A stretch of 64,000 bases of DNA, taken from positions 105,400,001 through 105,464,000 of the forward strand of contig NC_043003.1 of assembly GCF_006345805.1 (NCBI RefSeq), read 5' to 3'. This document shows, one piece after another, positions 33,670-55,700 of the stretch. The stretch is from Octopus sinensis. Lineage: Eukaryota. A program made the translations under genes and the position numbers. The stretch's first letter is position 1. Every line of letters starts with the position of its first letter. Below the pieces are notes generated by a model. It did not search any database and was not told where the DNA came from. It was given only the letters and a program-made list of their open reading frames with translations.

Positions 33670-36600
33670 GTAAATATACCATTTGTAGATTTTGATTTAC
33701 CAGTTTTCTATATAAAAAAAAGAGGGACTGTTTTATTACTGGTAAATGGAATTTGTTGTGTGTGAGAGAAAGAGAGGTAAAAGAAGTAGAACAAAAAAAG
33801 AAATATAACTGGCAAAGAATGAGCAATAAAAATACTGTGTTTACTCAAATATGAGTAGAACTGTTTTGTACTTGATTTTAACTGTTAAAAATGGGGTGCA
33901 ATTTATATACGGGACAAAGCTTTTAACTATGTGAGGAAAAATTTTGTAACACTAAATATGGGGTGTTATTTATACATGAACAAATATGTTTCAGATTAAA
34001 GTTGGTCCCTTTAGTGTTATCAATAATGTTGTTGTTTTTACAAAAATAAAATAACTAATCAAACAAATGAGCACAACATTAACACTGGCCCTTTATCTTG
34101 GAGCGTTATCTATGGGGTTTGCAGGAATTTGTTGCTAATTTCTCTTACCTAAGAAGAGATAATGGTTTGTGCTGATGATGGGCTTAGTGATGACAGTGTA
34201 ATGCATATCTCTGCTGTGAGAAATGATTGGAAGGGCAGCCCGTGGCTTTGAAATGCTGCCTCAGAAAAAAGAGAAAAAAACCTTGATGAGTACAATAACT
34301 ATGAAGATTGTCATGAGGCCTGCAAGGCTAAGCTGTTCCTTTAGAAGGGAAACGAGCCCTAAAATGTTGTTGCTGTTGTATATCCTTGACTGACTTCTAC
34401 CTTTTTTATTGATACTTGCATAGAAGCTGAAAGTGTTTGCTTTCTCAGTGGTTTGCACCTATGCTTCCCAGGTATCTCTTTCACCAAATATTCCCAGTAT
34501 CTCTAAAAACTCAATCTCTTGTTCATCTTTTGAGCCCATCCATACTAGAGACATCCATGTAATAACATCCAATTACTTCTTTGCAATGATATCACATTGA
34601 AATTCTCTGTACAACAGATACATCTCCACACATTCTGTTGTTGGTTAAGGGTCAAGATTTTAACTGATTTTTATGTTGAAAGATGTGAGAATATTACATT
34701 TTAAAAAAATGGACCTCTTGGATCAACTTTGTCTTTCGCTCTTTTCTGGGTTGTAGAAGGGAGCCAATCCAGGATAGTGAGTTGGCAGAACTGTCAGGGG
34801 ATTGGACAAGATGTGTTGAAGTACCTTTGTGGCTCTTTCCATTCTAATGGTAATATGTGCAGTAGAAGCCTTTAAGCAAAGCCTTTCCTTTGGACAACAA
34901 CTTCTGGCATGAAGATGGCATTCTTGCATTTATAGACAACTGCTAGTCTTTCATACAACAAAACGTTGACCAAGCCTGTACAGACATGACTTCTGGAAAT
35001 GTTAGATGTGCAGTGTGCTTGTAAAAGATTGTGATGGTTCGTGGCTTAGTGGTTAGGGCCCTAAGATCATGAGTTCGATTCTTGGTGGGGCACTGAATCC
35101 TTGAGCAAAACATTTTATTTTACATTGCCCCAAAATGAGTTGTGCCTATAATCCAAAGGGTCAGCCATGTCACATTCTGCGTTACACTGAATCTCACTGA
35201 GAACTACATTAGGGGGTACATGTGTCTGTGGAGTACTCAGCCACTTGCAAATTAATTTCACATGCAGGCTGTTCTGTTGATCGGATCAACTGGAACAGTT
35301 GTCATCATAACCGGCAGAGTGCCAATTCATTCACTTGTAAAAGATATCAATTATTATGTTCTTAGTGTAAGGTTTGTTTCATGACTACATCACAGATTAG
35401 AAAAGGATTATAAGGCGGTAAGCTGGCAGAAACGTTAGCATGCGGTATTTCGTCTGCCGCTACGTTCTGAGTTCAAATTCCGCCGAGGTCGACTTTGCCT
35501 TTCATCCTTTCGGGGTCGATTAAATAAGTACCAGTTACGCACTGGGGTCAATACAATCGACTTAATTCGTTTGTCTGTCCTTGTTTGTCCTCTCTGTGTT
35601 TAGCCCCTTGTGGGCAGTGAAGAAATAAGAAAAGGATGGTCATACCTGGAATGCTTTTGTTGCTTGCAATGTGTGCTGTCTACTAGTAGCTATGCAAACT
35701 GGTCAGAGCTGTGTCTAGCCAGGATCATTATAGAAACTGCTCACCTCTCAGTTGGTTTTCTGTTACACTATCAATAGGATTTTTATTTTCTCTGCTGTAT
35801 TATTTCACAAAACTTGGTAACATTTTTTAATGAAAGGCTTTTTGTTTTAGATGCAGAGAAGAAGAAGAAGCAGCAAAAGAAGAAACCGAATGGACTTAAG
35901 GCAGAAGACGGCAACACGCAAAATCATGTGGAAGGTGTGTGTGGGATTCGGTTTTCTTGTTACTAACATAATTGTTCAGTTCTATATGCCCACAGGCTTA
36001 TGGCATAGTACTTAAGAGCGCGGGCTTCTAACCCCAAGATTCCAAGTTCAATTCCAGGCAGTGACCTGAATAATAATAATAATAATAATATCTAAAAATA
36101 CCTTAGGAATGAGAACCCAGGTTCAAAATTTCCCCAAGGCTCCTGATGAAGGCTGGAGGGTATATCAGCTGAAACGTGTTAACAACAAACAAGATGAGGA
36201 CAAATATCCGTCAAATGTAAATAATGAACATAATTGTTGTTATTAACATTTTATTGTCCATTTTCAAAGTTAGCATGTAGTAGTAGTGGTTGTTTGACCT
36301 CAGATCAAGCCTGGGTGATCAATCAGAGCTAACTTGGGGGCTAAACAGCAACAATTGCTAACCCTTAAAAATAGACTGTCCCGGTTTTCTTTTAAGGCTT
36401 TAGTAGAACTACATTAGGCCTTTAGCATTTAAACTGGTCATGCCAGGCCCAAATATTTTGCTTGTTTGGTGTTTAAACTGGCCAGATCTGGCTTCTCACA
36501 TCAATCCCACAATGTCATTCTAAAAATATGCAAATCACATCATTGAAATTTTGTAGCTACAAGATAATAATGCATGATTAATTCCAAAACAAAATCAATA

Positions 36601-37129
36601 AATAGGCATAACATTTGGTAGAGTTATCTGAATGCTGGATTATCTTAATCCGTGGTCTTATATAATACAGTTTCATGTGCCCTGACAGATCACTGCTATT
36701 TCTAGCAGGTTGCATGACCACATAAGAGTCTCACTTGCTGACTCCTCCTAACCTAGGTTTATGCATCTCTTATACAGTTGAGTTTTTTTGTTATCTCATC
36801 TGTGACCATCATCATCATCATCGTCATCATCAACCACAAACGTCTTTGTATTTTTCTTTGTAGGAAATGTGAAAGCACCAAAACAAAAGAAATCTGAAGA
36901 GAATGCGGCGGGTGGTAGGTGGCTTTAACCATTTAAATATATTATTGGGAGTTTCTGTGAATAGGTGCAGGCATGGTTACACAGTTAAGAAGCTCACTTT
37001 GCAACCACGTGGTTTCAGGTTCAATCCCATTGTGTGGAACCTTTAGCCCCTGGCTAACCAATACTCCATGCAAATTTGATTGACAGAAACTGAAAGAAAG
37101 TTGTGCATTGTGTGTGTGTGTGTGTATAT

Positions 37130-37174
<45 letters not shown>

Positions 37175-38406
37175 CACACACACACACACACATACACAAA
37201 GAAAACAGAAAATGGAGAAGTACTGATTAACAGCAATTGACTTACATCAATTATTTAATTCAATGCAAATAGACTGCATCCCATCTAACAGCTGTTTCTG
37301 CTTCCAGTGTTATATGGTTTTGCCATTGATATTCAAAATATGTAAAAATATTAATCATATTTGATAATAGAACCAATCTGAAACAAGGAGCATCATATGA
37401 TTAATATTTTTACATATTTTGAATATCAATGGCAATACCATATAACACTGGAAGCAGAAACAGCTGTTAGATGGGATGCAGTCTATTTGCATTGAACTAA
37501 TAAATAATAATTGATGTAAGTCAACTGTTGTTCATCAGTACTTCTTCATTTTTTGTTTCTTGATAAACTCATGTTTATCCTTGTCTTTACCTATAACTTA
37601 TGAACATATGTTCGTATATGTATGCCCATGGTTAAACATAGGTAACATACCAATAGTGTAATGGATACTTCTATCCCTTAGTTATTTTTAACTTCTAACT
37701 CAACTAACCTATATATGTATATAGATAGATGTAAGAATTTACTGTGGTCAAGGCTGTATGGCATTTGATTATAAATAAATAAGATAAAAAATACACCAAT
37801 GAATGAAAAATATGTAAACGCACGAGAGAAAAGTACAGGACAAAGTAGCAAAAGAAGATAACTCCCACATCAGTTATCAGACAAGTAATAAACAGTCTGA
37901 CAACTGATGAGTGAGTTGTCTTCTTTTGCTACTTTGTCCTCTACTCTTCTCTCTTGTGTTTACATATTTTTCACTCGTTGTTGATGTCCTATACACAATG
38001 TGTATTTTTTAAATTTTATATATATTTAATAATTAGGGTTCAGCAAAGATTTGCTTTACCACATACCGAAGTTTAGAAATAGCAGCCAAAACCTTAGCTA
38101 TTTCTTCTACTTTAAAAAGGGACTCCCGGAGAAACCAAAATACTTGAAAACAATCCATGACCAGATATTGATTGATTTTCATTACTTTCCTCTGCCTATG
38201 TGGATTGTTTTCAAATATTTTGGTTAGCTAAGGTTTTGGCTGCTATTTCTAAACTTCGGATTGTGGTAAAGCAAATCTTTGCTGAAGCCTAATTATTAAG
38301 TATTATTTAAGTTTACCGTGAAATGGTCCTTTTTTCATGCTGAATTCTACTTGGTGAAATTATTGATTACCTCTTAATTAATTAATTTTACCCTTTGTTA
38401 TTATTG

Positions 38407-38447
<41 letters not shown>

Positions 38448-41400
38448 TACATACAAGGTGGCCAGGCCAAATTTGACAGTTTACATAAAAATAAAAGAAA
38501 ACATAAAATCCCATCCACAGATAAAAGTATTTTAAAAAATCAAAAAAACATTAACTAGGTTATGGCTGAGAGATAACAGTTTACTCAGAAGCTGCCCTCA
38601 ACTTCCACCATGGCCTTAACCCTTTCGTTACCAAACCGCCCAAAGCCGCCCGAAAAAAATTTTGGTTTATGAAACCAAACCGCCCAAATTTACCTATTCA
38701 TATTTAAATGAGAATATCAGAGCAAATCTCTTCAGTACATTCGTGAAAACACGTATTATACTTCGTAAACAGTTCAACTACAGTTTTGTACAATAATCGA
38801 AGTGTAATTTTAATTCCGTGAATTTTGGGAGATTTTTTTCCGAAATTTGTTCCTATTGTGTTTTCAAAATTTGTAATTCTGACAAAAAATGGATACGAAT
38901 TTCATTATATCAAGCAGCGAGTCAGAATTCGAAGGATTTTCTACTGAAGACCTTCATAAATCTAACTCTATGACTGAAAAAAAAAAGCACATGGTATTTG
39001 ATAATGAATTTGATGTTTCATTTTCCGAAAGTGAAAACAGTGAATCTGAGATCTCCGATAGCGATAAAGAAAACGAATTGGCACCTGAATGGAGTGAAAA
39101 TTTAAAAACTGTTTCTTTCGGTGATTTTTCTGCAGAAACTGGACCAAGCCACAGACTTTCCCAGAAGGGTAAAGCCTTAGGCTATTTCTATTTACTTTTT
39201 CGAATGAGCCTATTTGAAATCATTACAGCGAAAACGAACCGTTACGCTAAACGTAAACAAAACGAAAGAAAGGATAGTTTGTTATTTCCCACAACCTTAA
39301 ATGAAATTAAGACTATTTTGCCATAAATATTATTATGGGTATCAGAAAGTTACCCAGAATAACAAATTCTATCGTAAAATTTTGTTGTATACCCAATTGA
39401 ATATTAGCTAATATTTTCTATAGCGATGTTTGAACAAAATTTTAATAATTTTATATTTTGTGGAATTTACCTGTATCTACCTGCAAATAGAGTCACTTTG
39501 TGACAAAAATTATAGTATAGAATTGGTTGAGAATATTTCATTAAATTATCTTCCAAAAATCAGATTAATATATCGATAAATAAAAAAGTTATAGTTGTTT
39601 AATGAAACCAGACTAAATTTATGATTACGTTAGAAATTAATTGAAACACATAAGGGGTGTAATTTGGTCAGAAATATAGTAACGAAAGGGTTAAGATGGC
39701 TCAGAAATCTGGTGCATACATTTCTCACTCTGTGCCTGGGAAGATATTCAAACACTTCCTTGATCTTGGCTACCAGCAGGCAGAGCGATTGGTGTTTTTC
39801 TCAACCGTGCCCCACACATAGTAATCCATGGGATTGCAATCAGAGTAATTGGGAGGGGGGGTGCAGAAGCAGGGGCGTGTGAAGCCTTAGAAATTCTCCA
39901 ACAACCACTTCTGACTCTTTCTAATGGTAATGCAAAGAGCCACACATATGGCCTTCCAGCAGCAACCCTCTCCAATCAGGGGCTTGACCACAATCTCCAG
40001 CAGATTGACATAATGGCCTGAATTGAGCCTAAGACCCTGTTCAAAGACGTAGGGATGAATTCCATCATTTGGGTGCAGTGAGAACGCCTTCTGTGTCCCT
40101 TCCTGCTGCCCATGGCTTCTTAGTCTCTGTTGCAGCTGTCCATGTCATGTCCTACAGCCGTTACAGTGTCCAGAGCATTGAGCAGCAGTCATCCTCATCA
40201 TTTAACATCTATTTTCCATGCTGGTATGGGTTGGACAGTTTGACTGGAGCTGGCAAAGCCAGGAGCTACACCTGGTTCCATTGTCTGTTTTGGCATGGTT
40301 TCTGCAGTTGGATGGCCTTCCTAGTGCCATCCACTTTATAGAGTGTATTGGGTACTTTGTATGTGGTTCCAGTAGTAGCAGGGTCACCAAGTACCTTGCA
40401 ACTGGGAGTTGGGGAAGTAGAATTAAGGGGCTGTGGCTTTGTGCCAGTTTAAAGATTTAAGGTATAGAAGATATAGGTGTCTTGCTGCAGAGTTGATTCT
40501 TGGCCACCCCAGTTGGAAAATAAAGGAGAGTGAAATGAAGAGAGTGGTAGTGAGAGAGATGATGGTGGGGATGTTTCAGGACATGCCCTCAAGGGACATT
40601 GGGGATGGCAAAGATAGGGGAGGTGACATGGAAACTTGGGCTGGGAGTGTGGGCAGGATGAAGTGACTAGCAAAAGAGAAATATAAGAGAGGTTTGGGGG
40701 CAAGGGTTGCATCACATATGTAAGGATGTTGAGGGTGATAGCAAGAAAGTGAGGAGTGGATGACAGAGAGCAGCACAGAGAAGGGAGGTGTTGTGTGGAC
40801 GCCCCCAGACGACGAAGTAGGCTAGCCTAATACATAGATATAGAGGGAGAAGTCTAGACGTCTGGAATTGAGTAGCAGTCATAGTAGACTAGAACAGAGA
40901 AGAGTAGTAGAATTGAGTAGTAGAAGGCACCCGAACGTGTGACATAACAGGGAGAGAAGGCGCCAGAAGGAGGTGATTGGTGGGAACAGTAGGAGGGTGG
41001 GTGGGCAAGGTAACTGAGAAAACCAGGGAGTGTAGTATGTACCTATTCTGTTCTCAGGTGATTGAGGAAGTGATGAGTGTTAAGGGATGAAATGTGGGTG
41101 GTGGCAGAAGAAGGTTGATGTTGATCTGTTAGAGATCTGTTTATTATTAGGCAGCATGGGTACTTCAGCTGTAGTTTGCAGGCAGGGGACATGCCAGTGT
41201 CTGCAACAGAAGTTTTGGCTCTCAAACATGCTACAAGGCAAGGCCTGTGTTTAGCAGTCTTTTACTAAGACATACTCTCAACCTAGAAATAGGTGCCATC
41301 TTTGGTAAGGGGCATCGTATCTATATAGGGGTTAAGCAGTCTGATGGTAAATAACATGTCCAGAGAAAAATATTACTTTCATTCATTTATTTAAGATAAT

Positions 41401-44400
41401 AATACTATTATTATTATTATTAATTTCAATATTATTGTAGAACTTACTAAAAAGAAAACGCAAAAGCAACAGAAAGGTAAGAATTTTTAATGCTTTCTTT
41501 TATGAGTCTCTCATTTTGACCCTCTGGCATTTAAACTGGCCAGATCCAGCCTCTCACTTCTATCCTACAATGTCAGTCTAAAAACAAACAATCAAGTCGT
41601 TGAAATCTTGAAGCTACGAGACAGTGCAGAGCATTACACTTGACAGAATCACCTGAATGGGTAGCTTCTCCCTTCCATAACTGCTTTTGGAAATTGGTCT
41701 CAAGAAAAATCTATTAAGATAATGTAGAGTTTGGAGTTGCTAAAAGAAAGCAGGAGAAATGAACCATTCAAAAGAAGTCTTGTCACGATTGTCAGAAATA
41801 AGCCTATCAAGTTTCTGCAAGTGTGTTTTAGATTCTGGTATCAATGTCAGATTATCCTATCAGAATAGGATAATCTGTAGCCACAGAGAGGAGGATATGC
41901 ACATTCACCAAATCGTGACCCTTTAGTATTTAAACCAGCCATAATCGGTCAAAATATTTAACTTGTTTTATGTTCAGATCGGCCAGATCTGGCCTCTTGC
42001 ACCTCCTCTACAATGTCATTTCAAAAATAAACACTGACATCATTGAGTCTCAAAGCTATGGAGATAATGCGTGATGTAAAACAATGTGAATAAATAAACA
42101 TTACATTTAACAGCATAATCAAATGCTAAAAGGTTAAAGCTATAATGCTACAGAGCTGATGCTTAATAAGGTCAGTAGGCCTTTGTAGTCCCATGTCTTT
42201 TGGAATGTAATAGAAAGTTGGAACCAGTTTGGCTTTATTATTTTGTAATTTACGTCAGATATTTGTCAGTCTCATTCATAACAAACTGAAGCCATTGTGC
42301 CATAGTAACAATTGTGTTAATTGGTTTTATGCTATGAATATGTTTTTTTTTTCTTTCTTTCAGAAGCAACAACTCCTACACCAAAGACTGGGCAAACCAA
42401 TGCTTTAAAAGGTAAACAATTTTGTTGTTGTTAGATAATTTTAAATGTTAATGTTGCTTCTACATGTTGTGCCTAATTAGCACAAACGTCTTCGATGCAA
42501 CGGCTTCCACACTTTAGTGTTTTCTTTGTTGTTTTTCCTTTATAGAAAATGGGAAAAATAAGAAACATAATACCAGTGGAGGAAATGTGACAGATGGATC
42601 TACTGGAGAAGGTAGAATAATATTTAGCTACTGAAATATATATTGCTGCTTTAGAATTTTAATTTAATTTGCATTAAAAGAAAGCAAAACAAAAGTTCTA
42701 AGAAATTGATGGCATCAGTAAATTACTTCTAATTCAAGCCCCATTAATCAGGTTATCATCTCATTTGGTGCCTTAACCAGTTTGTTCTTATCTCATTTAT
42801 GTTGGCTGTGTGGTAAGTAGCTTGCTTACCAACCATTTGGTTCCGGGTTCAGTCCCACTGCGTGGCACCTTGGGCCGACCAAAGCCTTGTGAGCGGATTT
42901 GGTAGACGGAAACTGAAAGAAGCCTGTCGTATATATACATCATCATCATCCTCATTTAACGTCCGCTTTCCATGCTAGCATGGGTTGGACGGTTCAACTG
43001 GAGTCTGGGGAGCCCGAAGGCTGCACCAGGCCAGTCAGATCTGGCAGTGTTTCTACAGCTGGATGCCCTTCCTAACGCCAACCACTCCGAGAGTGTATAC
43101 ATATATGTGTGTATATGTTTGTATGGCTGTTTGTCACCCCAACATTGCTTGTCATCCAATGCTGGTGATTACGTCCCTGTAACTTAGTGGTTCAGCCTAA
43201 GAGACCGACAGAATAAGTACTAGGCTTACAAAGAATAAGTCCTGAGGTCTAAAGGTGGTGCTCCAGCATGGCCACAGTCAAATGACTGGAACAAGTAAAA
43301 GAATAAAAATCCACCCCCACTCCAGAACCAATTCTATTCCTCCTCATCTTCCTTCAGCCCTCTGCTCTTTCCCCTCTCCTATACTCAATCCTTAACACCT
43401 CCAGTCCTCTGTATCACTTCACCTATATTCCCTCCTGCTCTGTACCTTGAGGGTGTGTCCTAATACACATCCATCACTCTCTCTCTTAGCCTTTCTCTCT
43501 CTCCCTGCTTCTCCAACTGGGCTGTCCTTGTAGATAGGTGCCTTGTAACAAGGCACCTATTTCTGTTTCCCTCTGTTATTCTTTTAACTTCTCATCAACT
43601 GGCACAAAGCTACCTCCCTCAATATTGCTCCCACCCCTCACCCTCACTCGAGGGAACTTTGTTTTGTCTTGCAAGATTTTTTGGTGACCTTGCTGGGTAC
43701 CACATAAAAAACATCTAGAACTCTTTGTAAAATGTTTGGTATTAGGAAGGGCATCCAACCATAGAAACCATGTCTAAACAGACAATTGGAGCTTGATGCA
43801 GGCTTTTGATTTGCCAGCCTTTGTCAAACTGTCTGACCTGTGCCAGCAAGGAAAATGGATGTTAGATGGTGTTGATGACGATGTCCTGAGAAATATCAGA
43901 CCAAGAACGGTTGGTTAAATTCTGTTATGACATCTTAAGGTACAAATAAAATTGAGGATTGATGAGAAAACTCACTAAAGACACCTTAGATATTCACTTG
44001 GGGCTCAACTGTATAATGTGTTTATTTTGTATAAAGAATACAACATATTAACCCTTTTGTTACCAACCCAGCTGAAACCACTTCTGGCTCTGAGTACAAA
44101 TGTCTTGATTTCATAAGTTTTGAATTAAAATCTTCCACCAAACCTTACTCACAATTTATGTTCCTAACACTAGCTGTTATTTTACTAAATTCTTTGTTAT
44201 ATTTAGAATTAATTGAAAGAAACACAGAACATTTCAACAGAAATACAGTAACAAAAGGGTTAAGATCCACTGAAATTCTTAGCCATGCGATCTCCTTTCT
44301 GCTGCTCTGGGAATATTTATCAACAAACTGTATAGTGTGGGAAAAAAGCATTCATCGTCATCATCATGTCGCTTCTACATGTGTGTCTGATTAGCACAAG

Positions 44401-47400
44401 CATCTTTGATGCAACAGCTTCCATATTTTACTGTTTTCTTTTGTTGTTTTTGCTTTATAGAAAATGGGAAAAATAAGAAACATAATAGCAGTGGAGGAAA
44501 CGTGACACACACGGCAGTTTCATGTTTTTTTGTGTGTGCAAATTTGTGTATGTGGTGCTCCCTAGCAGATTACTAACGCAAGGGAGGATAATCATTCCTT
44601 CAACGTCTTTGGCGGAATTAGAAGATGGAATCAGAAAGTTAGCATTAAGGAAAATAATGCATTGGATCTGCATATTTATTTGATTTGTTGGTTTCTTGAT
44701 GTGAAATAATGTTCATATGAGTTGTTATAATGTTTCTGAATTGCTTGTTATCATTGTTCTATTCAGCAGAAATACACTTGTTGCTAACAATCATTGTAGA
44801 CTCAGTCAGTCAACAAATAAACTTCACGAGGTTTTGCAATGTTGTGAGAGAACATCCCTGTTATTATTTTTTATTTTTTTATTAGCGTTCAACTCAATCA
44901 CTTTGCCTGCATCAAATGGAATTTGGCAAGATCTGCTACCAAGATCCCATTCCATTATTTCTTTTGTTTGAGCCTGGTGCAGCCTACTGGCTTGCCAGTC
45001 CCCAATCAAACTGTCCAACCCATGCCAACATGGAAAACGGACGTTAAACAATGATGATGATGATGATTTTCTTATGCAATCCCATACTGTGTCATCCTGT
45101 ACCTTCCTAGAACTTTTTTGTCAGTCATTGTGATTATTATTGTTATCATTATTGTTATTATTATGATTTAATTTCAATATCATTGTAGAACCTGTTAAAA
45201 AGAAGACAAAACACAAGCAACCGAAAGGTAAGGTTTTCTTCTCCGTCTAATTTCATATCCTTTCATATTCATAATTGCTTTTGAAAATTAACTTCATCTG
45301 ATATTTGGGTCTCGGAATATATCTAATGAGTTCACAAATGGAGTTTGCTGCAGTTGCAGTGGAACAAGTGACTGAATACATTAAAAGAATCAATTTTTAT
45401 TAGTTAACTATTTGTCAGAAATGTGTTTGTGGAGGCACATGGCCTAGTGGTTAGAGCAGTGGACTCGCAGTCGAGGGATCGTGGGTTCGAATCTCAGACC
45501 GGGCGATGTGTGTGTTTATGAGCAAAACACCTAAGCTCAGAAGGTCATGGCGAAACTTCTGCTGACTCTTTCGCCACAACTTTCCTCCTGCATCTTGCAG
45601 CTCACCTGTGACGGACCAGCGTCCCATCCAGGTGGGGAACCTATATGCCAAGAAACCGGGAAACCGGCCCTAATGAGCCAGGTGTGGCAAGAGAACAGAA
45701 ATGTTTGCTTGCTTGCAGGTCGAGAGTGCCAGTATTTCTGGATCCAGTTGGCAATTAGTTTGTTGAAAGCTGCATATAATAAGTAGACAACACCAAACAA
45801 ACATGTAAACAGGATTTGTTATACCACACTTGGCATAAAAAAGATGTTCACACGTCATCATATATATATTTAGAATCAGCAAGATGAAAATAGTTTAATA
45901 CAACATGCTAAAAACTGCCTATCCAAAATTTAACACTGGGACTGGTTCTGGGTTTAACATAATGAATGTGTGTGTGTGTGGTGTCATGTCTGAAAGGAGT
46001 GTGTGTTCATAATGTACTCAAGAACATGCTGAATTTGGTGCTGAAAAGGGCTATTTATAAGTTATGTTTGACCCTTTCGTTACCAACCTGGCTGAAACTG
46101 CCTCTGGCTCTGAGTATAAATGTCTTGTTTTCATAAGTGTTGAATTAAAATCTTCCACCAAACCTTAGTCACAATTTATATTCCTAACACTAGCTTAATG
46201 ATAACTAAGTTATTTTACTAAATTCTTTGTTATATTTAAAGTAATTTCAAGAAACACAGAATCTCAAAATAAATACATTAACGAAAGGGATAAGGAAACT
46301 TCTAGAACAATCTGGAGAAGCCGTCTTGTGGACACTGGCCACTGGTAGGGCAATAGCTTGGCTGCACACCTGATCAAGCCATTGCTGTGTCATGACATGA
46401 AAGTCATAATATGGCAATGCAAGTTCACATCCTGCTACCAGTTCATCTACAATTTGTGAGAGATTGTTTTAGATTTTGTTAGCTGAATGTTTTAGGATTC
46501 CATGTAAAAGAAGAATATTTATGTGCTCAAAGGTGGTGGCCACAGCAGCATCTTTAAAGCTCCATTGCAACAGCATTGAGGCTTAGTAAGCAGTGATTGG
46601 TGAGCATTTTGTAAAATATTTATTTCTTTACTACCCACAAGGGGCTAAACACAGAGGGGACAAACAAGGACAGACAAAGGGATTAAGTCGATTACATCAA
46701 CCCAGTGTGAAACTGGTACTTTATTTATCGACCCTGAGATGATGAAAGGCAAAGTCGACCTTGGTGGAATTTGAACTCAGAATGTAACGACAGACGAAAT
46801 ACTGCTAAGCATTTCGCCCAGCGTGCTAACATTTCTGCCAGCTCGCCGCCTTTATAAAATATTGTCATCTCGTGTGCTGTGGATTGTAATGCAGTGTAGG
46901 AACAGATCCGACATATTTAGTTTGTAGGTGACCAAATTAAATATTTGTCTGGCTCTAGTTCTACTTGCTTGCTTCAGATGGTTGAATCTAGTATTCCATG
47001 GCAATAATTATGATAATTGGTGGTTTTTATGCTATAAATAAGTTTCTTTTCTGTTTCAGAAGAAACAACAACTACAGCAAAAGCTGGGCAAAACAATACC
47101 TCGTCAGCTTCAAAAGGTAAACAGTTTTATTTCTGTTAAATAACTTTAGATATTAACATTTGAAGCATTTGTGTCTAAATAGCAGAAACATCTTTGGTAT
47201 GACAATTTTCCATCTTTTATTTTTTCTTTGTAGAAAATGGTAAAAAGAAGAAATCCAATAACAGCGGAGAAACTTTGCAAAACGGATCTGCTGGAGAAGG
47301 TAGAAAACTTATTGAAATATTTTGTTGCTGTTTTAGAATTTTGATTTAGAATACATTAAAAGAAAAATATCAAATCAAAAACTCTAGATAAATTGTAGTT

Positions 47401-49679
47401 TTCTTTAAGATGGCCTTCAATTTGTATATCATTAAGTAAGAGCCAGCTCTGTCTGCAACATTTGACCTCTTGTTACTCTTTCTATATAAGGCAGTCCTCA
47501 ATTTCTAGGGCAAAGAGCACTCCTCTTATGTGAGATTGATGGAATTATGTCACTTTCTGATGATATATTTGTAAGAGGCAGCTCGAAGGCAATATGTGAA
47601 GTATTAGATTGTATAGTTAGATAACTTGTCCAGTGAAATATGTTTTCCTTTAAAACAACAAAATAGCAAAGGCAGAGAGCTTCTTGCAAAAAGGAAAAGT
47701 TTAAAAAGTATTTCAGGTGAATGGAGTAAAGAAGTGTGAATATGTGCAGAACCATTGATGTTGATTGTTGAGTGCAGACGGGTTGGTACTGTATAGACTC
47801 ACATTTCTTGACTACATTCACTCCTGACAATGGGCCTTTACACCTGAAATATATGAAGTTTAATGAAGTTGTCCCTTTTAGCATTGTAAGAAGCTCTCTG
47901 CCTTCGTTATTTTGTTATTCTACTTCTTTATCATATTGCTCCAAGGTGGCTGTCCTGCTCTTCTTTCTTAGCTTTGCTTATTTATAATATTATTCTTCAT
48001 TTCAATATCATTGTAGAACCTGTTAAAAAGAAGAAAAAACACAAGCAACAGAAAGGTGAGATTGCTCTTCCATTTCTAATTTGATGTCTGGTATCTTAAA
48101 AGTTTTCATGTTTTTTCACACCTGTTATGAGTTGGTATGGTTTGCTGCAGTTGATGGGAAAGATTTAAAAAGAAAAAAAACTCAAATTTTTGTTTGGTTA
48201 CGATTATCAGAAGTGAGTTCATCATCATCGTTTAACGTCCACTTTCCATGCTAGCATGGGTTGGACGATTTGACTGAGGACTGGTGAACGAGATGGCTGC
48301 ACCAGGCTCCAATCTGATCTGGCAGAGTTTCTACAGCTGGATGCCCTTCCTAATGCAACCACTCCGAGAGTGTAGTGGGTGCTTTTATGTGCCACTGGCA
48401 TGAGGGCCAGTCTGGCGGTACTGGCAACGGCCATGCTGAAATGGTGTCTTTAAAGTGCCACCTGCATAGGAGTCAGTCCAGCGGCACTGGCAACGACCTT
48501 GTTCGAATGTTATGTTCACATGCCACAGGCACAAGTGCTAGTAAGGTGACGCTGGTAACGATCACGCTCAAATGGTGCTTTTTACGTGCCATCAGCACGG
48601 AAGCCAAACAGCTGCTCTGGCAGTGATCCCGCTCGGATGGAGCTGTTTGCGCTCCACTGGCACGGGTGCGAGTCATTGAATTTGGTTCAATTTCAATTTC
48701 CCCACATCTATAATTTCTGAGAATAGTTTTAGATTTTCTTATCTAACTGTAATAGGATTTCATCTGAATATGGATCTTGCTCACAGCATATAAGGGAAGG
48801 ACCTGCACACTCCGCAAAATGCTAGCCCCGACATCTCTCAAACATTGCTGAGAATTAATAAGCAACAACTGATGAACATTCTGTAAATCATTATAGTCTT
48901 GTATTTTGCACAAATAATAGAAAGTTACAACAAATTTGTTTTACATATTTCATTTGTTGGTTACCGATGAAATACTGTCAGGTTATAATTCTACTCATTC
49001 ATAACAAACTGAAGCCATTGTGCCATAGTAACAATTGTGTTAATTGGTTTTATGCTATAAATATGTTTTTTTTCCTTTCTTTCAGAAGAAACAACTCCTA
49101 CACCAAAGACTGGGCAAAACAATGCTTTAAAAGGTAAACAATTTTGTTGTTGTTGTTAGATAATTTTAAATGTTAATGTTGCTTCTACATGTTGTGCCTA
49201 ATTAGCACAAACGTCTTCGATGCAACAGCTTCCACACTTTAGTGTTTTCTTTGTTGTTTTTCCTTTATAGAAAGTGGGAAAAATAAGAAACATAATACCA
49301 GTGGAGGAAATGTGACAGATGGATCTACTGAAATATATATTGCTGCTTTAGAATTTTAATTAAGAGAAAAAATGCAGCAAAATGAAAGCTCTAAAAAGTT
49401 GCTAAAAGTTATCATTAAGCTAGTGTAGAATTTGAATACCTTCAAGTAAATTGTATTTGATCCATCTGTGGACTTTGTGTCAGCTATCAAATAGTCTTTG
49501 ATTCATTATGAAATGGTCCAAAGCATTCTCTTATTTGATTTAATCACTTGCCTCTCAGCCAAATTTTCATTTTAATCCTTCTTTCACTTTTCTGTGCTAA
49601 TGTGTGTGTGTGTGTGTGTGTGCATCACAATATTGTCGCAAGATTTAGTTTTTTTCTCATCTCATCTTTACACAAGGTA

Positions 49680-49740
<61 letters not shown>

Positions 49741-52700
49741 GTTCTAGAGGGAGCTTTTTGGGAATATTTATAAACAAATTTTTTAATGTGTAAAACTGTT
49801 AACCTTCAGTCTTCGTTTTACATATTACAAACATATTTCTAATGTAATTTTCACATATGTATTACAAGCTGGTGGTGAGGGACACAAAAACTAAGGAAGC
49901 GTGACGACTAGATCTGATGGCTTCTTCTCTGTCACCTCTTCAGCTCCCTGTGGAACTTTTGACCCATCAACATGTCTTTGATTTCTTTCTTTTTGTCCTC
50001 CACAATCTTCAGGTACACTTCCCATTTTGTTTCAAAGGTTGCTGAGAGGGTTCTCAGCTTTACCCGTTCCTAGAAGATTAGGATCTTTAAGGATCATTAA
50101 ACACTGAGTTCTAATCCTGTACCCTGATACGAGAAGGTGCTCCAGCCTCTCCAGTAGTGCTTTAATCTGTGAATGTCCTCACTCTTCCTTTACTCTAAAT
50201 AAATGGACATCTTTTGCTTTCTGTGGTTTTCTTAGCAAGAAATGTTTCTCTGCTGTAGATCTGCTAATTCTATGAAGAAACCCCAACCTAAAGGATTTGG
50301 CTTGTGTTTAGCAGTCTTTTAATATTATGCCCACAAACAAGTTGTTGGTGTTATTTTTTTAAATGTCTGAGAGAGCAGCATACCCAGATGTGGAGATTCT
50401 GATAGCATAGGTTCTGAGATTATGATGGCATTGGTTCTAAACTTGTTCAGTGAATGTCCATTTTCCCTCCTGACATGTGTTGGTCTGACAGGAGCCAACA
50501 AGCCAGAGGACTGCACCAAGCTCCAATGTCTGTTTTTGCATCGTTTCTACAGCTGGATCCCTTCCTAACGCCAACCACTTCCCAGAATGTACTGAGTGCG
50601 ATCACCAAGTAATTTCCAGGACAAGATCCTCCTTCAACTGAGGGAGGAGTAAATTTGAGGGATATGGCTTTATGCCAGAAGGTGAGAGGTGTGCCTGAAA
50701 TGCCATCATTTACAGGACATTAACCACCAGTGTTGTTTCTTTCTTTAAACCTTTCCATTGCAATTAATGGTTTTTGTTACAGTTAATTTTGAAAATAGGA
50801 AAAATTTGTCACGGGATTGTCAATGGAGTTCCAACCAACCATAGGTTGGTCAAAGGATCATGACAATGAGAGATTAAAGTCTGAGAGAGGGACAGGAAGC
50901 TGGTGTTTTGCTGTAGGGAAGTGTATTGTTTTATAATTGTTTATTATTATATTTGAATTTCAATATCATTGTAGAGCCTGCCAACAAGAAGAAAAAACAC
51001 CAAAAAGGTAGGGTTTTATTCTTCTCAAATTCTATCCTCTTTCATGATTCTGTCGTTCAATTAGCATATTAAAGTTATATGTGATTTTTTTTGTTTTCAT
51101 GTTTACTTTTTTGTTCTTTTGGATATTAGCTCAACCGATATTTTGGTCTCAAAAAACAAATCTAATGAATTCAATATTGGTTTGCTACAGCTGAAGGGAA
51201 AAAATGAGATTCAACATTTGTTTGGTTACCCTTGTCAGAAATGAGTTCATCTTCAGTTTCTGAAAAGTTGTTTCAGATTTTGATTTCTGAATGTAAGAGA
51301 AATTCCATCTGAATATGGTAACAGGCACTGAGAGAAGGAGATGCACACTTACCAAGATATTGGCCTCAGCAGCATCTTTAAAGCTCCATTGCAACAGCAC
51401 CGATGCTTAGTAAGCAGTGATTGGTGAGCATTTTGTAAAATATTGTCATCTCGTGTGCTGTGGATTGTAATGCAGTGTAGGAACAGATCCGACATATTTA
51501 GTTTATAGGTGACCAAATTAGATATTTGTCTGGCTCTAGTTCTACTTGCTTGCTTGCAGATGGCTGAATCTAGTATTCCATGGCAATAATTGTGATAATT
51601 GGTGGTTTTTATGCTATAAATAAGTTTCTTTTCTGTTTCAGAAGAAACAACAACTACAGCAAAAGCTGGGCAAAACAATACTTCGTCAGCTTCAAAAGGT
51701 AAACAGTTTTATTTCTGTTAAATAACTTTAGATATTAACATTTGAAGCATTTGTGTCTAAATAGCAGAAACATCTTTGGTATGACAATTTTCCATCTTTT
51801 ATTTTTTCTTTGTAGAAAATGGTAAAAAGAAGAAATCCAATAACAGCGGAGAAACTTTGCAAAACGGATCTGCTGGAGAAGGTAAAAAACTTATTGAAAT
51901 ATTTTGTTGCTGTTTTAGAATTTTGATTTAGAATACAATTGCAGCATGGAAGGTGTTTGTAAGTCATTTAAGAAACACACAAAAACCGTTCGATTCACTT
52001 TAACATTTAAGTTTAATTTGTCAAAATATTTTCGGCGCTTTAAGACCGCGACCTGTTCACTGTGCTATGCAAGTACATCTCCGATTTAGAATACATTAAA
52101 AGAAAAATATCAAATCAAAAGCTTTAATAAATGAATGAAGTTATTGTTAAGGTAGCCTTTAATTAGTGTCAAATAATCACTGATCTGTCACCAAACACTA
52201 CAAGTCATCATCTCATTTGATGTGTCCTTGAATAGTTTCTGTATCTACAAAATTTAATGTTCATCCTGGGTCGTCAAGTTGCATGGAATTGATTGCCTTA
52301 GAAACAGCAAAGTATTTTATTGGGACTTTTGCCACTTATCGCTTTGTATGAGGTTGAGTATACCTCATACTGCTTCTGTGTTTAGTGAAGCTACTAATGG
52401 GTAGGTCAGATTTTCTAACTCTTCCACTGCTAAAAACAAAGAAACAATAATTATGCAGGGTTCTTAATTTCCGTTCCCAAAGATTTCTTAAATAGTTTGA
52501 AGGATAATTCTTCTTCCTCTATTTAGTGTCAGACAAAAGTTACTAATCTGTTTTCCGTTAGTAAAAAAGCTAGATTTATTTAGATAACTTATTTTACAAC
52601 TAAGTATGCGGCCCTTGTTATATTTTCCTTTCATTCAGAGGAAACAATGAATCATAAAAACCAAGAAATAGTTCAGACCATTTTCAATGTTATCAACCTG

Positions 52701-55700
52701 ATGAGATTTGTGCCTAACGATCCTAAGCATCTGCTTCAATATTTTACTATTTTCTATGATTTGTACAGAGAGTGCAAAAAAGAGGAAACGCAAGATCAGT
52801 GAAGAAAGTGTGAAAAGTGGTGATGGTAGGTTGCTTGTTCATTGGAATATATTGCTGGCATTGTTTTACTTTACTATTGTGTGATTTAATATACGGAAAC
52901 ACTGGACGCGGTCAATGAAATTGACTGGGAGAAAGCTATTTTAGCCCTGGATTGCCATACCTAACCTGCCACATTCTCACATTAAATAAGCAAAGTGTAA
53001 AAAATAAAAAGAAATAGGATATATATATATATGTGATGTATGGTTAAAGAATTTCTATAACATTCCCCACCCCACCCTAATATAATTTGATTCATTTGCA
53101 ATCTAATTGATTATATTGAAGATGAGCATTAATTACAGTGTAAAGTTAACTAGTTATGCTTCCGTAAAGTTGAGGGTTTTAATTCAGTTTTTTTTTTTTT
53201 TTTTTTTGTAATTTTGTGGTGAGTTGATTAATGTCCAAAATTCATTTTTATCCATTTATTAGTCACAGTACAATGGCAAGCGAGAGCATTTCTGTTTAGT
53301 TTTGTTTCATGGAAGTTTAGGAGTTTCACTTGAAGCTGGTGCTTTATATTTCTGCTTTAATGATGGAACATTAGCTTCAAATAAGATTGTTTTCTCCAAA
53401 GTTATGGCTTGTGCTTGTTGTTAGTAAAATAAAATAGACATTAGAATTTGGTATTAAAAGTGACTCAGATACTAAGAGAGTAGCTAAACCCTTTCGTTAC
53501 CAACCCGGCTGAAACCATCTCTGGCTCTGTAGTACAAATGTCTTGTTTTCATAAGTTTTGAATTAAAATCTTCCACCAAACCTTAGTCACAATTTATGTT
53601 CCTAACACTAAGCTTAATGATAACTAAAGTACTTAAAGTAATTGAAAGAAATACAGAGCATCTCAAAATACATAGAGTAACGAAAGGGTTCAAGCAAAAA
53701 TCAGTCTTTTCTATAGATTCTTTATTTTCAGGTGTTTTTGTTTTCTTTTTCTTTGCTTTTGCTAGTTTTATTTGGCCAAAGTTGATTTATATTCACCATT
53801 ATTGTAGTATTGTTAGAGATTATCCTTGTTTACCCCAGCTGAACAAGAGTTGAGGATGCTTATGATCAAAAGCATTTTCTCATGACCATCCAGTCTTTAT
53901 AGGGGGGTGGGGTGTCTCAGATTACCATATGAGATGCATCTCAATTTCTAAAGCAGATATGCAGGAAAAACGGTTTTAGTAGATTAAAGCATATAATCAT
54001 CCTTATCATCATTTAACGTCCGTTGCCCATGCTGGCATGGGTTGGACAGTTTGACCAGGGCTACTAAGCTGAGAGACTGCACCAGCCTCCAGTCTGATTT
54101 AGCATGATTTCTATGGATGGATGCCTTCTTAATACCAGAGAGTCTCAATTTTACATATAGGGCCCAGGGGATTTTCTTCAGCAAGAAAGTATGCCTTATA
54201 TGCCATCAATTACGGGACATTGTTTCTTTCTTTAAACCTTTTTGTCACCATATTTGAGTTAATCCTTGTTTATCCCAGCTGAAATCACAATCAAAATCAA
54301 ATTCGCTGATGTGGCTGATGACAGCACCACCTGAATGGCATGGGTGCCAGTGGAACGTTAAAGCACCATCCGAGTGTGATCGTTGCCAAGGCCGCTGACT
54401 CAGTCATGTGTTGGTGGCACATAAAAGGCAACATTTGAGCGTGATTGTTGCCAGTATTGCCACTGCAGCTGGACTGGCTCCTGTGCAGGTGACACCTAAA
54501 AGACACCATTTGAGCATGGCTGTTGCCAGTACCGCCTGACTGGCCCTTGTGCCAGTGGCATGTAAAAAGCACCCACTACACTCTTGGAGTGGTTGGCATT
54601 AGGAAGGGCATCCAGCTGTAGAAACTAACTCTGTCCGATCAGATTAGAGCCTGGTGCAACCATCTGGTTCGCCAGTACTCAGTCAAACCATCCAACCCAT
54701 ACCAGCATGGAAAGCGGGCGTTAAACGATGATGATGATTTCTGTTGCAATAAACTGCTTTTGTTACAGTTAATTTTGAAAATATGAAGAATTTAATAAAA
54801 TTACTTTGTTGTAATAAAACTGGCGTTTGGAACATGGAATTTTGGTGGAAGAAGGTTTTAATTCCGAACATTTTTAAAACGGAGTTTGGGTCATAAAATC
54901 AGAAAGTGTTTCAGGTGAGTTGGTATGAAAAGGGTCAAAGATGGTTGGGTGTGGGTCGAGGATCAAACAACCATCCAGAGACTTCTTTATTAACTCATTT
55001 GTGAGGGTGTAGTGTGTTGGTGTAACAGACCTAAAATCTTCAGTGAGTGTTTGCTGGGAGTCAGTTGTAAGCTAAGATGTAGAGTGATGATGATGATGAT
55101 GTAGATTGATGATGATATGTGGTTAAAGTTTGTAATTTAGTGGAAAATGTCAGGAAAAACTGGTTCATATTTCATTATATAGGTTTATTGATCATTGGGA
55201 AATATTTGATCAGTTAGGTCTGTTAATTGAGACTTGAACCTGGACACCAACTGGACGGTTGATTGCTTTCTACAGCAAAGCTTTTTGTTGGTTCTTTCAG
55301 ACAAGAATAAAACCACCAAACCAAAAGGTGCACAAAGTGACAACTCACCTGCAGCAAAAGGTAATCGGTGTTGGTGCTTGATTGACCATTTTCCTGTTCA
55401 CAACTATTTCCACAGTAATTCTTACTCTGGAACTGTCTCCATTCTATGTAAATTCTTTCAGGAAACAATACAGTTGTTCTAAAAATGAAGGAGCCATTAT
55501 GTGAATTTCTTCATGTTGTTTCAGTATCAAAGTGTTTGTAGGACTCCACCGCTAGGAAAATAGGTTCTTCCAATTCATAACAGAAAATCCGTTTGTCTAT
55601 TTCTGAAAACTCTTGGCAGTCTTTGGTATTTTTGCATAAATTTCTCCCTCTTCAATATTGATGCTTTTATTTATCTTCAATAAAACTGAAACAGCGTCTT

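What the first reader, a model, noticed from the sequence alone, without database searches (positions are those of the whole stretch)
35851..55360. Fifteen consecutive symmetric phase-1 short exons allow frame-safe combinatorial splicing
Seen: every intact exon between coding exon 1 and the WKF exons is a multiple of 3 (33-84 nt; seven are 51 nt or shorter), ends in G and starts with A (once G). Any skipping combination therefore yields an E/D/G junction codon and keeps the frame. Inference: net charge and length of the N-terminal arm could be set by alternative splicing, possibly tissue-specifically, since microexon inclusion is often neural in bilaterians.
Basis: partly seen in the sequence, partly recalled or inferred. 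Interest (0 to 1): 0.75.

Follow-up and report, generated by a model that had tools for sequence, protein, structure and literature searches.

The report
Duplicated mini-exon array in octopus cholesin gene
The 15 short, frame-neutral exons are real: they come mostly from repeated duplication of a three-exon cassette in the disordered, lysine-rich arm of an octopus C7orf50/cholesin-like gene, and public Octopus vulgaris gene models already show several exon-skipping isoforms, so this is a clean but fairly ordinary example of a known gene architecture.

Summary
Observation confirmed. A 19-coding-exon model maps exactly onto the + strand. Between coding exon 1 (33489-33669) and the first WKF exon (58907-59109) lie 15 AG/GT-flanked exons of 33-84 nt. 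All are multiples of 3 and phase 1-1, all end in G, and 14 start with A.

The 15 exons are not independent. Thirteen belong to three exon families (A = lysine patch, B = Thr/Pro-rich, C = Asn/Gly-rich) amplified as a cassette. The array also holds three broken copies and shows signs of gene conversion. Only about five independent exon origins remain, giving chance of roughly 0.01 rather than 1e-6.

The gene is a WKF-domain (C7orf50/cholesin) homologue. The window is 95-99% identical to Octopus vulgaris OX597820.1, where seven annotated CDSs give five proteins that differ by skipping whole cassette exons. This supports frame-safe combinatorial splicing. However, template switching by reverse transcriptase or copy-number alleles could mimic part of it.

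Two of the 15 exons (52769-52825 and 55301-55360) appear in no annotated isoform.

The neural-microexon idea has no support: the exons are 33 nt or longer, and none has UGC near its acceptor. Tissue specificity is untested. Fish orthologues independently build the same arm from phase 0-0 cassettes.

Verdict: a new member of a known kind, of modest interest.

The parts
33489..33669 (+). Coding exon 1 (ATG, 60 codons + 1 base; ends in phase 1 with G)
   Evidence: Identical in O. vulgaris L001. Used by P0001/2/4/5. Conserved with the next exon in the O. bimaculoides fragment A0A0L8HI96.
35851..35934 (+). Exon x2, 84 nt, phase 1-1 (DAEKKKKQQKKKPNGLKAEDGNTQNHVE)
   Evidence: In all five O. vulgaris isoforms. 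No DNA similarity to the A/B/C families.
36864..36914 (+). Exon x3, 51 nt, phase 1-1; the only exon that starts with G
   Evidence: In all five isoforms. Its acceptor region resembles the C family only weakly (E 0.014).
41441..41476 (+). A1: A-type lysine-patch exon, 36 nt, net charge +4
   Evidence: A profile E 3.5e-26. In all isoforms.
42364..42411 (+). B1: B-type Thr/Pro-rich exon, 48 nt; tandem cagAAG acceptor
   Evidence: In all isoforms.
42546..42611 (+). C1: C-type Asn/Gly-rich exon, 66 nt; skipped in P0003, P0004 and P0005
44461..44510 (+). Truncated C-type pseudo-exon: the B-C intron and the first ~50 nt of a C exon, with the homologous donor lost
   Evidence: nhmmer with the BC profile, E 1.6e-32. 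Also present in L001.
45189..45227 (+). A2, 39 nt, net charge +5
   Evidence: Skipped in P0001 and P0004.
47060..47116 (+). B2, 57 nt; tandem cagAAG acceptor
   Evidence: The 506-nt block is 98.4% identical to the B4/C4 block.
47234..47299 (+). C2, 66 nt. Intact in the window; in the O. vulgaris reference it lacks one A of an A-run and is frameshifted
48017..48055 (+). A3, 39 nt, net charge +6
   Evidence: In P0001 and P0003.
49086..49133 (+). B3, 48 nt; tandem cagAAG acceptor
   Evidence: In P0001 and P0003.
49271..49323 (+). C3 pseudo-exon: acceptor intact, but a 28-nt deletion removed the exon's 3' end and donor.
   Evidence: Same state in L001. Never used in the isoforms.
50975..51007 (+). 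A4, 33 nt, net charge +4
   Evidence: In P0001, P0003 and P0004.
51642..51698 (+). B4, 57 nt; peptide identical to B2
51816..51881 (+). C4, 66 nt; peptide identical to C2; joined directly to the WKF exon in all five isoforms
52639..52670 (+). Degenerate B-type relic with no in-frame donor
   Evidence: Part of the BC-profile match 52622-52858, E 2.4e-13.
52769..52825 (+). x14: a diverged C-type exon (9-nt deletion, 57 nt, KKRKRK patch). Splice sites and frame are intact, but it is in no annotated isoform
   Evidence: Identical in L001. Absent from P0001-P0005.
55301..55360 (+). x15: a diverged B-type exon, 60 nt. Splice sites and frame are intact, but it is in no annotated isoform
   Evidence: BC profile E 4.5e-6. 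Identical in L001. Absent from P0001-P0005.
58907..59109 (+). First WKF exon, 203 nt, phase 1 to 0
   Evidence: Pfam PF10180, E 2.3e-10, 40.6 bits against a cutoff of 25.. Same phases as scallop exon 2.
59665..59812 (+). Second WKF exon, 148 nt, phase 0 to 1
60459..60514 (+). Last coding exon (53 nt + TAG), encoding ...EPGLIQRTRAEQVIQIL.

Best explanation
The region is the N-terminal arm of an octopus WKF-domain gene, the homologue of C7orf50/cholesin. The arm is a lysine-rich, almost certainly disordered tail: 269 aa, 24% Lys and 4.8% hydrophobic residues. In the octopus lineage it is encoded by mini-exons that all lie between phase-1 introns. Most of the array arose by repeated local duplication of a three-exon cassette. 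The cassette consists of A (basic patch EPVKKKKKHKQQK), B (Thr/Pro-rich spacer) and C (Asn/Gly-rich spacer). The present order is A1 B1 C1 Cpsi A2 B2 C2 A3 B3 C3psi A4 B4 C4 Bpsi C5 B5. Some B-C blocks have since been homogenised by gene conversion. A copy of a 1-1 exon is itself 1-1 and inherits its G...A boundary bases. The uniform symmetry and the Glu/Asp/Gly junction codon therefore follow from this history, and from the requirement that only frame-neutral copies survive in a coding region. Because every exon is frame-neutral and encodes no folded structure, the spliceosome can skip any of them harmlessly. A exons have pyrimidine-poor acceptors and C exons have weak donors. Annotated O. 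vulgaris transcripts show at least four skipping patterns, which change the number of basic patches from 2 to 4 and the protein length from 320 to 371 aa. Shown: the exon structure, paralogy, conservation in a second genome, family membership and the existence of annotated isoforms. Inferred: that the isoforms are true splice products, that they matter functionally (for example through the number of nuclear/nucleolar-targeting or nucleic-acid-binding basic patches), and the order of duplication events.
For: Exact gene model and phases. WKF domain. Family names (C7orf50 homolog, cholesin) on related proteins. Paralogy: B2C2 vs B4C4 98.4% over 506 nt, B1C1 vs B3C3 87.5% over 441 nt, type 1 vs type 2 about 70%; alignment including introns; A-exon flanks 78-83%. 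Profile hits show that x14 is C-type and x15 is B-type, and reveal two further relics. Gene conversion: in O. vulgaris, B2C2 is 0.5% from B4C4 but 2.1% from its orthologue in the window. The same array is present in O. vulgaris OX597820.1, with only 3 exonic differences. Isoform exon paths. Seven CDSs and five proteins. Alternative forms in that annotation come from PASA on Iso-Seq and RNA-seq, with a genome average of 1.36 transcripts per gene. Composition and charge. Crude splice scores. Two scallop orthologues have a phase-1 intron, also split G|AT, just upstream of the WKF exon, and the same 1-0, 0-1, 1-end phases downstream. General rule that disordered proteins are assembled from symmetric exons, often by internal tandem duplication, and that alternatively spliced symmetric exons are the most disordered: PMC3632108.
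Against: I could not inspect any read-level transcript data. The isoforms are annotation models, and one of them is clearly distorted: P0003 has a 10-nt exon and cryptic sites that bypass a 1-nt deletion. Near-identical paralogous exons invite in-register template switching by reverse transcriptase and ambiguous mapping. The B2|C4 join of P0002 and P0005 is exactly what a C4-to-C2 jump, or mapping around the frameshifted C2, would produce. Exons x14 and x15 are never included in the models. Scallop exon 1 contains EPVKKKKK and SDNSPS inside a single exon, so it is unclear whether the mini-exons were inserted into an ancestral intron or arose by intron gain or loss. No function of the arm was tested. 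No PDB relative of the WKF domain was found.
Confidence: 0.75

Rival explanations
1. The array is real, but the annotated 'isoforms' are artefacts. They could arise from reverse-transcriptase template switching between near-identical paralogous exons, from mis-mapping among copies, or from the frameshifted C2 in the O. vulgaris reference. In that case the gene makes essentially one constitutive mRNA.
For: C2 and C4, and B2 and B4, encode identical peptides and are 97-99.5% identical in DNA. B1 and B3 differ by 2.5%. The O. vulgaris reference has a 1-nt deletion in C2, so reads from an intact C2 would map better to C4. This reproduces the B2|C4 join in P0002 and P0005. P0003 is visibly an ab initio-style model.
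Against: Skipping of C1 (the B1|A2 junction in P0005 and P0003) has no paralogous-jump explanation. In P0001 the C exon is C1-like up to the last 7-9 nt before the junction with A3, which leaves almost no homology for a switch. All junctions sit at canonical exon ends. Even if the B2|C4 join is re-read as B2-C2|W1, five exons are still skipped.
Confidence: 0.15
2. The length variants are alleles, not splice forms. The cassette array is copy-number polymorphic through unequal crossing-over, and the cDNA donors carried shorter arrays.
For: There is evidence of ongoing exchange between copies: a gene-conversion signature, and an N/S difference in C1 between the two genomes that matches the C3 pseudo-exon sequence. 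The cDNA data came from animals other than the one assembled.
Against: Two independent assemblies differing by 1-5% have the same exon order and the same three relics. P0004 and P0005 lack C1 while keeping its neighbours, which would need a deletion of about 0.3 kb with precise ends. Four different patterns would require many alleles.
Confidence: 0.07
3. One reading: a regulated, tissue-specific and possibly neural microexon-like programme sets the arm's charge and length.
For: The frame arithmetic holds. Charge differs strongly between exon types. This gene has 7 CDSs against a genome average of 1.36 transcripts per gene.
Against: The exons are 33-84 nt. No acceptor has UGC within 25 nt; the nearest lie at -30 to -37, upstream of the pyrimidine tract (compare). 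There are no tissue data. Recently duplicated, conversion-homogenised exons carrying neutral low-complexity sequence are equally compatible with unregulated, noisy skipping.
Confidence: 0.2

Closest known systems
Disordered protein regions assembled from symmetric exons by internal tandem duplication (Schad, Kalmar & Tompa 2013, NAR, PMC3632108)
   Same: Runs of same-phase symmetric exons encode low-complexity disordered sequence, arise by internal tandem duplication, and are prone to alternative splicing. Runs of successive 1-1 exons are the second commonest class in human.
   Different: That study is a human genome-wide survey. This case is a lineage-specific amplification in an octopus gene, with unusually short exons (33-84 nt against a mean of about 175 nt for human 1-1 exons) and evidence of gene conversion between copies.
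Fast skeletal troponin T (TNNT3) 5' mini-exons 4-8 (Breitbart et al. 1985, Cell; PMC2447309)
   Same: A block of consecutive very short exons of one phase class encodes a charged N-terminal variable arm. The exons are spliced combinatorially, so that length and charge vary (abstract read).
   Different: The TnT arm is acidic, its isoforms are shown experimentally to be developmentally regulated, and its exons are not recent near-identical duplicates. Here regulation is unknown.
Fish cholesin/C7orf50 orthologues (Culter alburnus P0014; Siphateles boraxobius isoforms X2 and X8)
   Same: Same gene family and same lysine-patch N-terminal arm, built from consecutive symmetric exons (159, 129, 69, 117 and 102 nt). 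A duplicated 71-aa cassette is present in isoform X2 and absent from X8.
   Different: The fish exons are phase 0-0 and longer, and are unrelated in sequence to the octopus cassettes. The modular architecture therefore evolved independently.
Scallop C7orf50 homologues (Mizuhopecten yessoensis, Argopecten irradians)
   Same: Same family. There is a phase-1 intron split G|AT upstream of the WKF exon, and the downstream exon phases are identical. The EPVKKKKK motif is present.
   Different: The whole arm lies in one or two large exons. Its repeats are intra-exonic and cannot be spliced out.
Neural microexon programme (SRRM3/4, eMIC domain)
   Same: Short frame-preserving cassette exons, often in disordered or surface regions.
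   Different: Size (at least 33 nt here, against 3-27 nt). No proximal UGC. No evidence of neural regulation. These exons are recent duplicates rather than deeply conserved.
Titin PEVK and CD44 variable-exon arrays (recalled from memory, not checked here)
   Same: Long runs of symmetric exons encode extensible or disordered segments whose length is set by exon choice.
   Different: Different proteins and functions. For those arrays regulation is established by experiment.

Membership tests
WKF-domain / C7orf50 (cholesin) protein family | Match to Pfam PF10180 (WKF) above the gathering score | tested here: met
   The peptide of exon 58907-59109 scores 40.6 bits against a cutoff of 25, E 2.3e-10. 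All O. vulgaris isoforms carry precomputed PF10180.
WKF-domain / C7orf50 (cholesin) protein family | Homology to proteins that sources name C7orf50 homolog or cholesin | tested here: met
   Hits to Mizuhopecten 'C7orf50 homolog', Argopecten 'cholesin-like' and Siphateles 'cholesin'. The exhaustive search gave 753 relatives at E<=1e-3.
WKF-domain / C7orf50 (cholesin) protein family | Conserved phase-0 intron inside the WKF domain (after ...D/S-x-K, before I/V-P/S-D) | tested here: met
   Octopus PEK|IPD, scallops ESK|VPN and DSK|IPN, fish SVK|VSD.
WKF-domain / C7orf50 (cholesin) protein family | Secreted hormone acting on GPR146 (the property that gives cholesin its name) | not testable with these tools
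   Known only from mammalian work cited in abstracts. Nothing here bears on it.
Symmetric phase 1-1 cassette exons | Length divisible by 3 and both flanking introns in phase 1 | tested here: met
   15 of 15 in the exact spliced mapping. The same holds in O. vulgaris for the exons used there.
Tandem exon duplication | Significant DNA similarity between neighbouring exons that extends into the flanking introns | tested here: met
   Four A copies, five B copies plus one relic, and five C copies plus two relics. Not met for x2 and x3.
Alternatively spliced cassette exons | Transcripts with and without the exon from the same gene | tested here: inconclusive
   Five annotated O. vulgaris proteins differ by whole exons, and the alternative forms are PASA-derived. 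No reads could be inspected, and artefact or allele explanations remain possible for some junctions.
Mutually exclusive duplicated exons (Dscam type) | Exactly one paralogue of a cluster per transcript | tested here: not met
   P0001 contains A1, A3 and A4, and also B1, B3 and B4, together.
Neural (SRRM3/4-dependent) microexons | Length 3-27 nt | tested here: not met
   The shortest exon is 33 nt. Seven exons are 33-51 nt.
Neural (SRRM3/4-dependent) microexons | UGC motif between branch point / pyrimidine tract and the 3' splice-site AG | tested here: not met
   None of 15 has TGC within 25 nt of the AG; the nearest lie at -30 to -37. The motif occurs in 74-79% of dependent microexons but is not strictly required.
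Neural (SRRM3/4-dependent) microexons | Neuron-enriched inclusion | not testable with these tools
   No expression data were accessible.

The most novel reading that the evidence does not exclude
In the octopus lineage, the cholesin/C7orf50 arm has become a splice-tunable 'valency dial'. A recently amplified cassette (basic patch plus two neutral spacers) is kept uniform by gene conversion. Its exons would be included in regulated, tissue- or stage-specific combinations that set the number of basic patches, and so nucleolar or RNA binding (or secretion behaviour). Two further exons (52769-52825 and 55301-55360) would be used only in tissues not yet sampled. Fish would have reached the same solution independently with phase 0-0 exons, which would imply selection for a modular arm in this family.
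Probability: 0.2. Interest if true: 0.5.

Novelty: new member of a known kind. Interest (0 to 1): 0.3.

Why it matters
The locus is a tidy, fully resolved example of how a disordered protein arm grows by exon-cassette duplication and thereby becomes alternatively spliceable. It has relics, gene conversion and a two-genome comparison all visible within 20 kb. An independent parallel exists in fish orthologues of the same gene.

It also has practical value for annotation. The O. vulgaris reference carries a likely 1-nt homopolymer error or polymorphism in one exon, which distorts one deposited model. Two plausible exons are unannotated.

It does not open a new mechanism. The principle is textbook: symmetric exons in disordered regions, tandem duplication and combinatorial skipping. 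C7orf50/cholesin has recently attracted interest as a hormone in mammals, so isoform diversity of its arm in other animals is of moderate comparative interest.

Tried and rejected
1. Homologue searches with short peptides (with the WKF exon; with the two unannotated exons plus flanks) returned nothing. They also missed the O. vulgaris proteins that contain 60 aa of the query exactly. They are therefore void, not evidence that exons 52769 and 55301 are unexpressed.

3. The look-up of encoding contigs did not find P0001, P0011 or P0016. No O. bimaculoides locus could be fetched, so a third octopus genome was not compared.

4. PDB sequence searches with the WKF region and with a family profile gave no meaningful hit. 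My recollection that C7orf50 appears in ribosome-assembly structures could not be confirmed and is not used.

5. I first read the scallop comparison as showing that all 15 exons were inserted into one ancestral phase-1 intron. I have softened this because scallop exon 1 contains EPVKKKKK and SDNSPS motifs. Intron gain in octopus or intron loss in scallops cannot be excluded.

6. A Pfam scan of intronic and other ORFs found nothing.

7. Tandem Repeats Finder sees no array, because the period is several kb. The duplication shows up only by self-BLAST and profile search.

Full report
**What the window is.** The sequence is eukaryotic: 38% GC, microsatellites and long introns. Region 22-64 kb is collinear with Octopus vulgaris chromosome record OX597820.1:115,797,105-115,841,447 (GCA_951406725.2, locus L001) at 95-99% identity, with several indels. 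The window therefore comes from another assembly of the O. vulgaris species group, possibly O. sinensis; this was not determined.

**The gene.** The exon at 58907-59109 matches Pfam PF10180 (WKF domain) at 40.6 bits against a cutoff of 25. A search with the assembled protein returned five O. vulgaris 'WKF domain-containing' proteins. More distant relatives are named 'C7orf50 homolog' and 'cholesin'. The exhaustive search found 753 family members.

**Checking the observation.** I enumerated phase-1-compatible AG..GT intervals, located a start exon and assembled a model. I then mapped the protein back with an exact spliced aligner.
- Exon 1 is 33489-33669 and ends in phase 1.
Their lengths are 84, 51, 36, 48, 66, 39, 57, 66, 39, 48, 33, 57, 66, 57 and 60 nt.
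- All are phase 1-1 and all end in G. Fourteen start with A and one (36864) starts with G.
- The first WKF exon also starts with AG. Every donor-acceptor combination therefore yields GAT, GGA, GAA, GAG or GAC (D, G or E) and keeps the frame.

The annotated proteins end ...KLSG|EPGLIQRTRAEQVIQIL, using 59665-59812 plus 60459-60511 and then TAG.

**The exons are not independent.** Self-BLAST, an alignment of the four B-C blocks with their introns and distance matrices show a repeated three-exon cassette:
- A: EPVKKKKKHKQQK-like, 33-39 nt, net charge +4 to +6.
- B: EETTPTPKTGQNNALK or EETTTTAKAGQNNTSSASK, 48 or 57 nt.
- C: ENGKKKKSNNSGETLQNGSAGE-like, 66 nt.

A profile built from the B-C blocks adds four more members:
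- A truncated C copy at 44461-44510 (E 1.6e-32).
- A degenerate B relic at 52639-52670.
- Exon 55301-55360, which is a diverged B-type exon (E 4.5e-6).

The third C copy (49271-49323) has lost its 3' end and donor through a 28-nt deletion. The array therefore reads A1 B1 C1 Cpsi A2 B2 C2 A3 B3 C3psi A4 B4 C4 Bpsi C5 B5. It is preceded by two exons (35851 and 36864) with no detectable paralogues.

**Chance estimate.** There are about five independent exon origins. Using the human conditional frequency of 0.396 for a phase-1 intron following a phase-1 intron (Table 1 of PMC3632108), five independent exons give about 0.01, against 9e-7 for fifteen. The pattern is still more than chance, but the excess is explained. 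A copy of a 1-1 exon is 1-1, and only frame-neutral copies can persist inside a coding region. 'Ends in G' is the donor consensus. 'Starts with A' reflects shared ancestry and Glu/Asp codons.

**History of the copies.**
- B2C2 and B4C4 are 98.4% identical over 506 nt. B1C1 and B3C3 are 87.5% identical over 441 nt, or 97.5% in the ungapped core. The two types differ by about 26-30%.
- The A-exon flanks differ by 27-43% between paralogues. The B-C blocks have therefore been copied or converted much more recently than the cassettes as wholes.
- In O. vulgaris, B2C2 is 0.5% from B4C4 but 2.1% from its orthologue in the window. This is the signature of gene conversion after the two genomes diverged, or else of an assembly artefact.
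- The single amino-acid difference between the window and O. vulgaris in C1 (N against S) matches the C3 pseudo-exon sequence.

**Conservation.** All 15 exons, their AG/GT sites and the three relics are present in O. vulgaris, with only three exonic differences. With 1-3% background divergence, this cannot separate constraint from recency. An O. bimaculoides protein fragment (A0A0L8HI96) conserves exon 1 and exon 35851 at 89%. Two transcripts from other cephalopods (Logan assemblies, species not identified) lack the A/B/C repeats. The amplification therefore appears restricted to octopods.

**Evidence on splicing.** The O. vulgaris annotation has seven CDSs (CAI9726312-18) giving five proteins, against a genome-wide average of 1.36 transcripts per gene. 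Alternative forms in that annotation were added by PASA from Iso-Seq and RNA-seq (PMC10700109). Mapping the proteins to L001 gives these exon paths:
- P0001 skips A2-B2-C2.
- P0002 joins B2 to C4.
- P0004 joins B1 to A4.
- P0005 skips C1 and also joins B2 to C4.

**Caveats on the splicing evidence.**
- P0003 is an ab initio-looking model. It has a 10-nt exon and cryptic sites inside B2 and C2. These compensate for a 1-nt deletion in an A-run of C2 in the O. vulgaris reference.
- That same deletion would push reads from an intact C2 onto C4, so the B2|C4 path may really be B2-C2 joined to the WKF exon. Five exons are skipped either way.
- In-register reverse-transcriptase template switching between near-identical exons, and copy-number alleles, can mimic skipping.
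- The B1|A2 junction (C1 skipped) and the C1|A3 junction have essentially no paralogous homology to support a jump. I take these as the best evidence for genuine skipping.
- None of the five proteins contains exons 52769-52825 or 55301-55360. All five join C4 directly to 58907.
- These two exons have intact sites and open frames in both genomes and belong to the C and B families. However, about 40 decoy candidates with similar crude scores exist in the same introns. Their use remains unproven.

**The neural-microexon suggestion.**
- The exons are 33-84 nt.
- None has UGC within 25 nt upstream of the AG. The nearest are at -30 to -37, upstream of the pyrimidine tract.
- A UGC between branch point and AG occurs in 74-79% of SRRM3/4-dependent microexons, although it is not strictly required.
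- No tissue data were accessible.

**Comparison within the family.**
- Two scallop orthologues have four coding exons, with phases 0-1, 1-0, 0-1 and 1-end. Their last three exons match the octopus WKF exons in phase. The scallop intron upstream of the WKF exon is also phase 1 and split G|AT.
- The octopus mini-exons thus share the phase of a conserved molluscan intron. Scallop exon 1 contains EPVKKKKK and SDNSPS, which resemble the octopus A and B5 exons. I therefore cannot say whether the mini-exons were inserted into that intron or whether introns were gained or lost.
- A cyprinid orthologue builds its arm from five phase 0-0 exons of 159, 129, 69, 117 and 102 nt. In another cyprinid, isoforms X2 and X8 differ by a duplicated 71-aa cassette. 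A modular, skippable arm has therefore arisen independently in this family with a different phase.

**Mechanism.** The arm is 269 aa, with 64 Lys, 30 Thr, 27 Glu, 27 Asn and only 4.8% hydrophobic residues. It is almost certainly disordered. Each A exon contributes one basic patch. Skipping changes the number of patches and the spacer length without affecting the WKF domain. A exons have pyrimidine-poor acceptors and C exons have weak donors, which is typical of skippable exons. Whether the variation is regulated or is splicing noise tolerated in a neutral linker is open.

**Verdict.** The feature is a new member of a well-known kind, namely symmetric-exon arrays in disordered regions generated by tandem duplication (PMC3632108). 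Its closest functional analogue is the troponin T 5' mini-exons (PMC2447309). Interest is modest.

Noticed in passing
window 42361-42367, 47057-47063, 49083-49089, 51639-51645: All four intact B exons have a tandem NAGNAG acceptor (cagAAG). Use of the distal AG would remove one codon in frame, giving a second, finer layer of possible frame-safe variation.
   Followed up: no
L001 24974-25038 (orthologue of window 47234-47299): The O. vulgaris reference lacks one A of an A-run in exon C2, so the exon is 65 nt and frameshifted. This is either a homopolymer assembly error or a real polymorphism. It explains the odd deposited model CAI9726312 (P0003), which uses cryptic GT/AG sites inside B2 and C2.
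   Followed up: partly
L001 24711-25098 and 29416-29805 vs window 46970-47359 and 51552-51941: The B2C2 block of O. vulgaris is closer to B4C4 of both genomes (0.5%) than to its own orthologue (2.1%). This is a gene-conversion signature or a collapse in assembly.
   Followed up: partly
window 42546-42551 vs 49271-49276: C1 encodes ENGKNKK in the window but ESGKNKK in O. vulgaris. The Ser codon is the one present in the dead C3 copy. This suggests sequence exchange from a pseudo-exon into a live exon.
   Followed up: no
window 44048-44264, 46068-46294, 53487-53690: A ~220-nt interspersed repeat (80-84% identity between copies, SINE-like) sits in three introns of the array. A second repeat family lies at 40189-40365, 42943-43097 and 48219-48391.
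   Followed up: no
window 59813-60458 vs L001 37751-41287: The last intron is 646 nt in the window but 3537 nt in O. vulgaris, an indel of about 2.9 kb. Another indel separates window 37724-39691 from L001 16299-17599. That window segment contains a 145-aa ORF (38889-39326) with no Pfam match.
   Followed up: no
L003 (Culter alburnus CM079604.1) and proteins P0010/P0011: Fish cholesin orthologues build the N-terminal arm from phase 0-0 symmetric exons. They have an annotated isoform pair differing by a duplicated 71-aa cassette. This is an independent parallel to the octopus array.
   Followed up: partly
L008 1568-2016 (Argopecten irradians exon 2): The scallop arm has an intra-exonic tandem repeat...VPKKKKDKKKKKKNVSFTESFTEEGSGDDENDSQEET... 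occurs twice. The same basic-patch-plus-spacer unit is thus repeated without introns.
   Followed up: no
window 13364-14659, minus strand: Overlapping long ORFs (285, 152 and 141 aa) look like remnants of a retroelement polymerase, but none matched Pfam at E<=0.01. They lie outside the gene.
   Followed up: partly
tool behaviour: the search for homologous proteins returned no hits for 68-aa and 101-aa queries whose sequence is contained exactly in database proteins that the same tool found with the full-length query. Negative results from this tool with short lysine-rich queries should not be trusted.
   Followed up: yes
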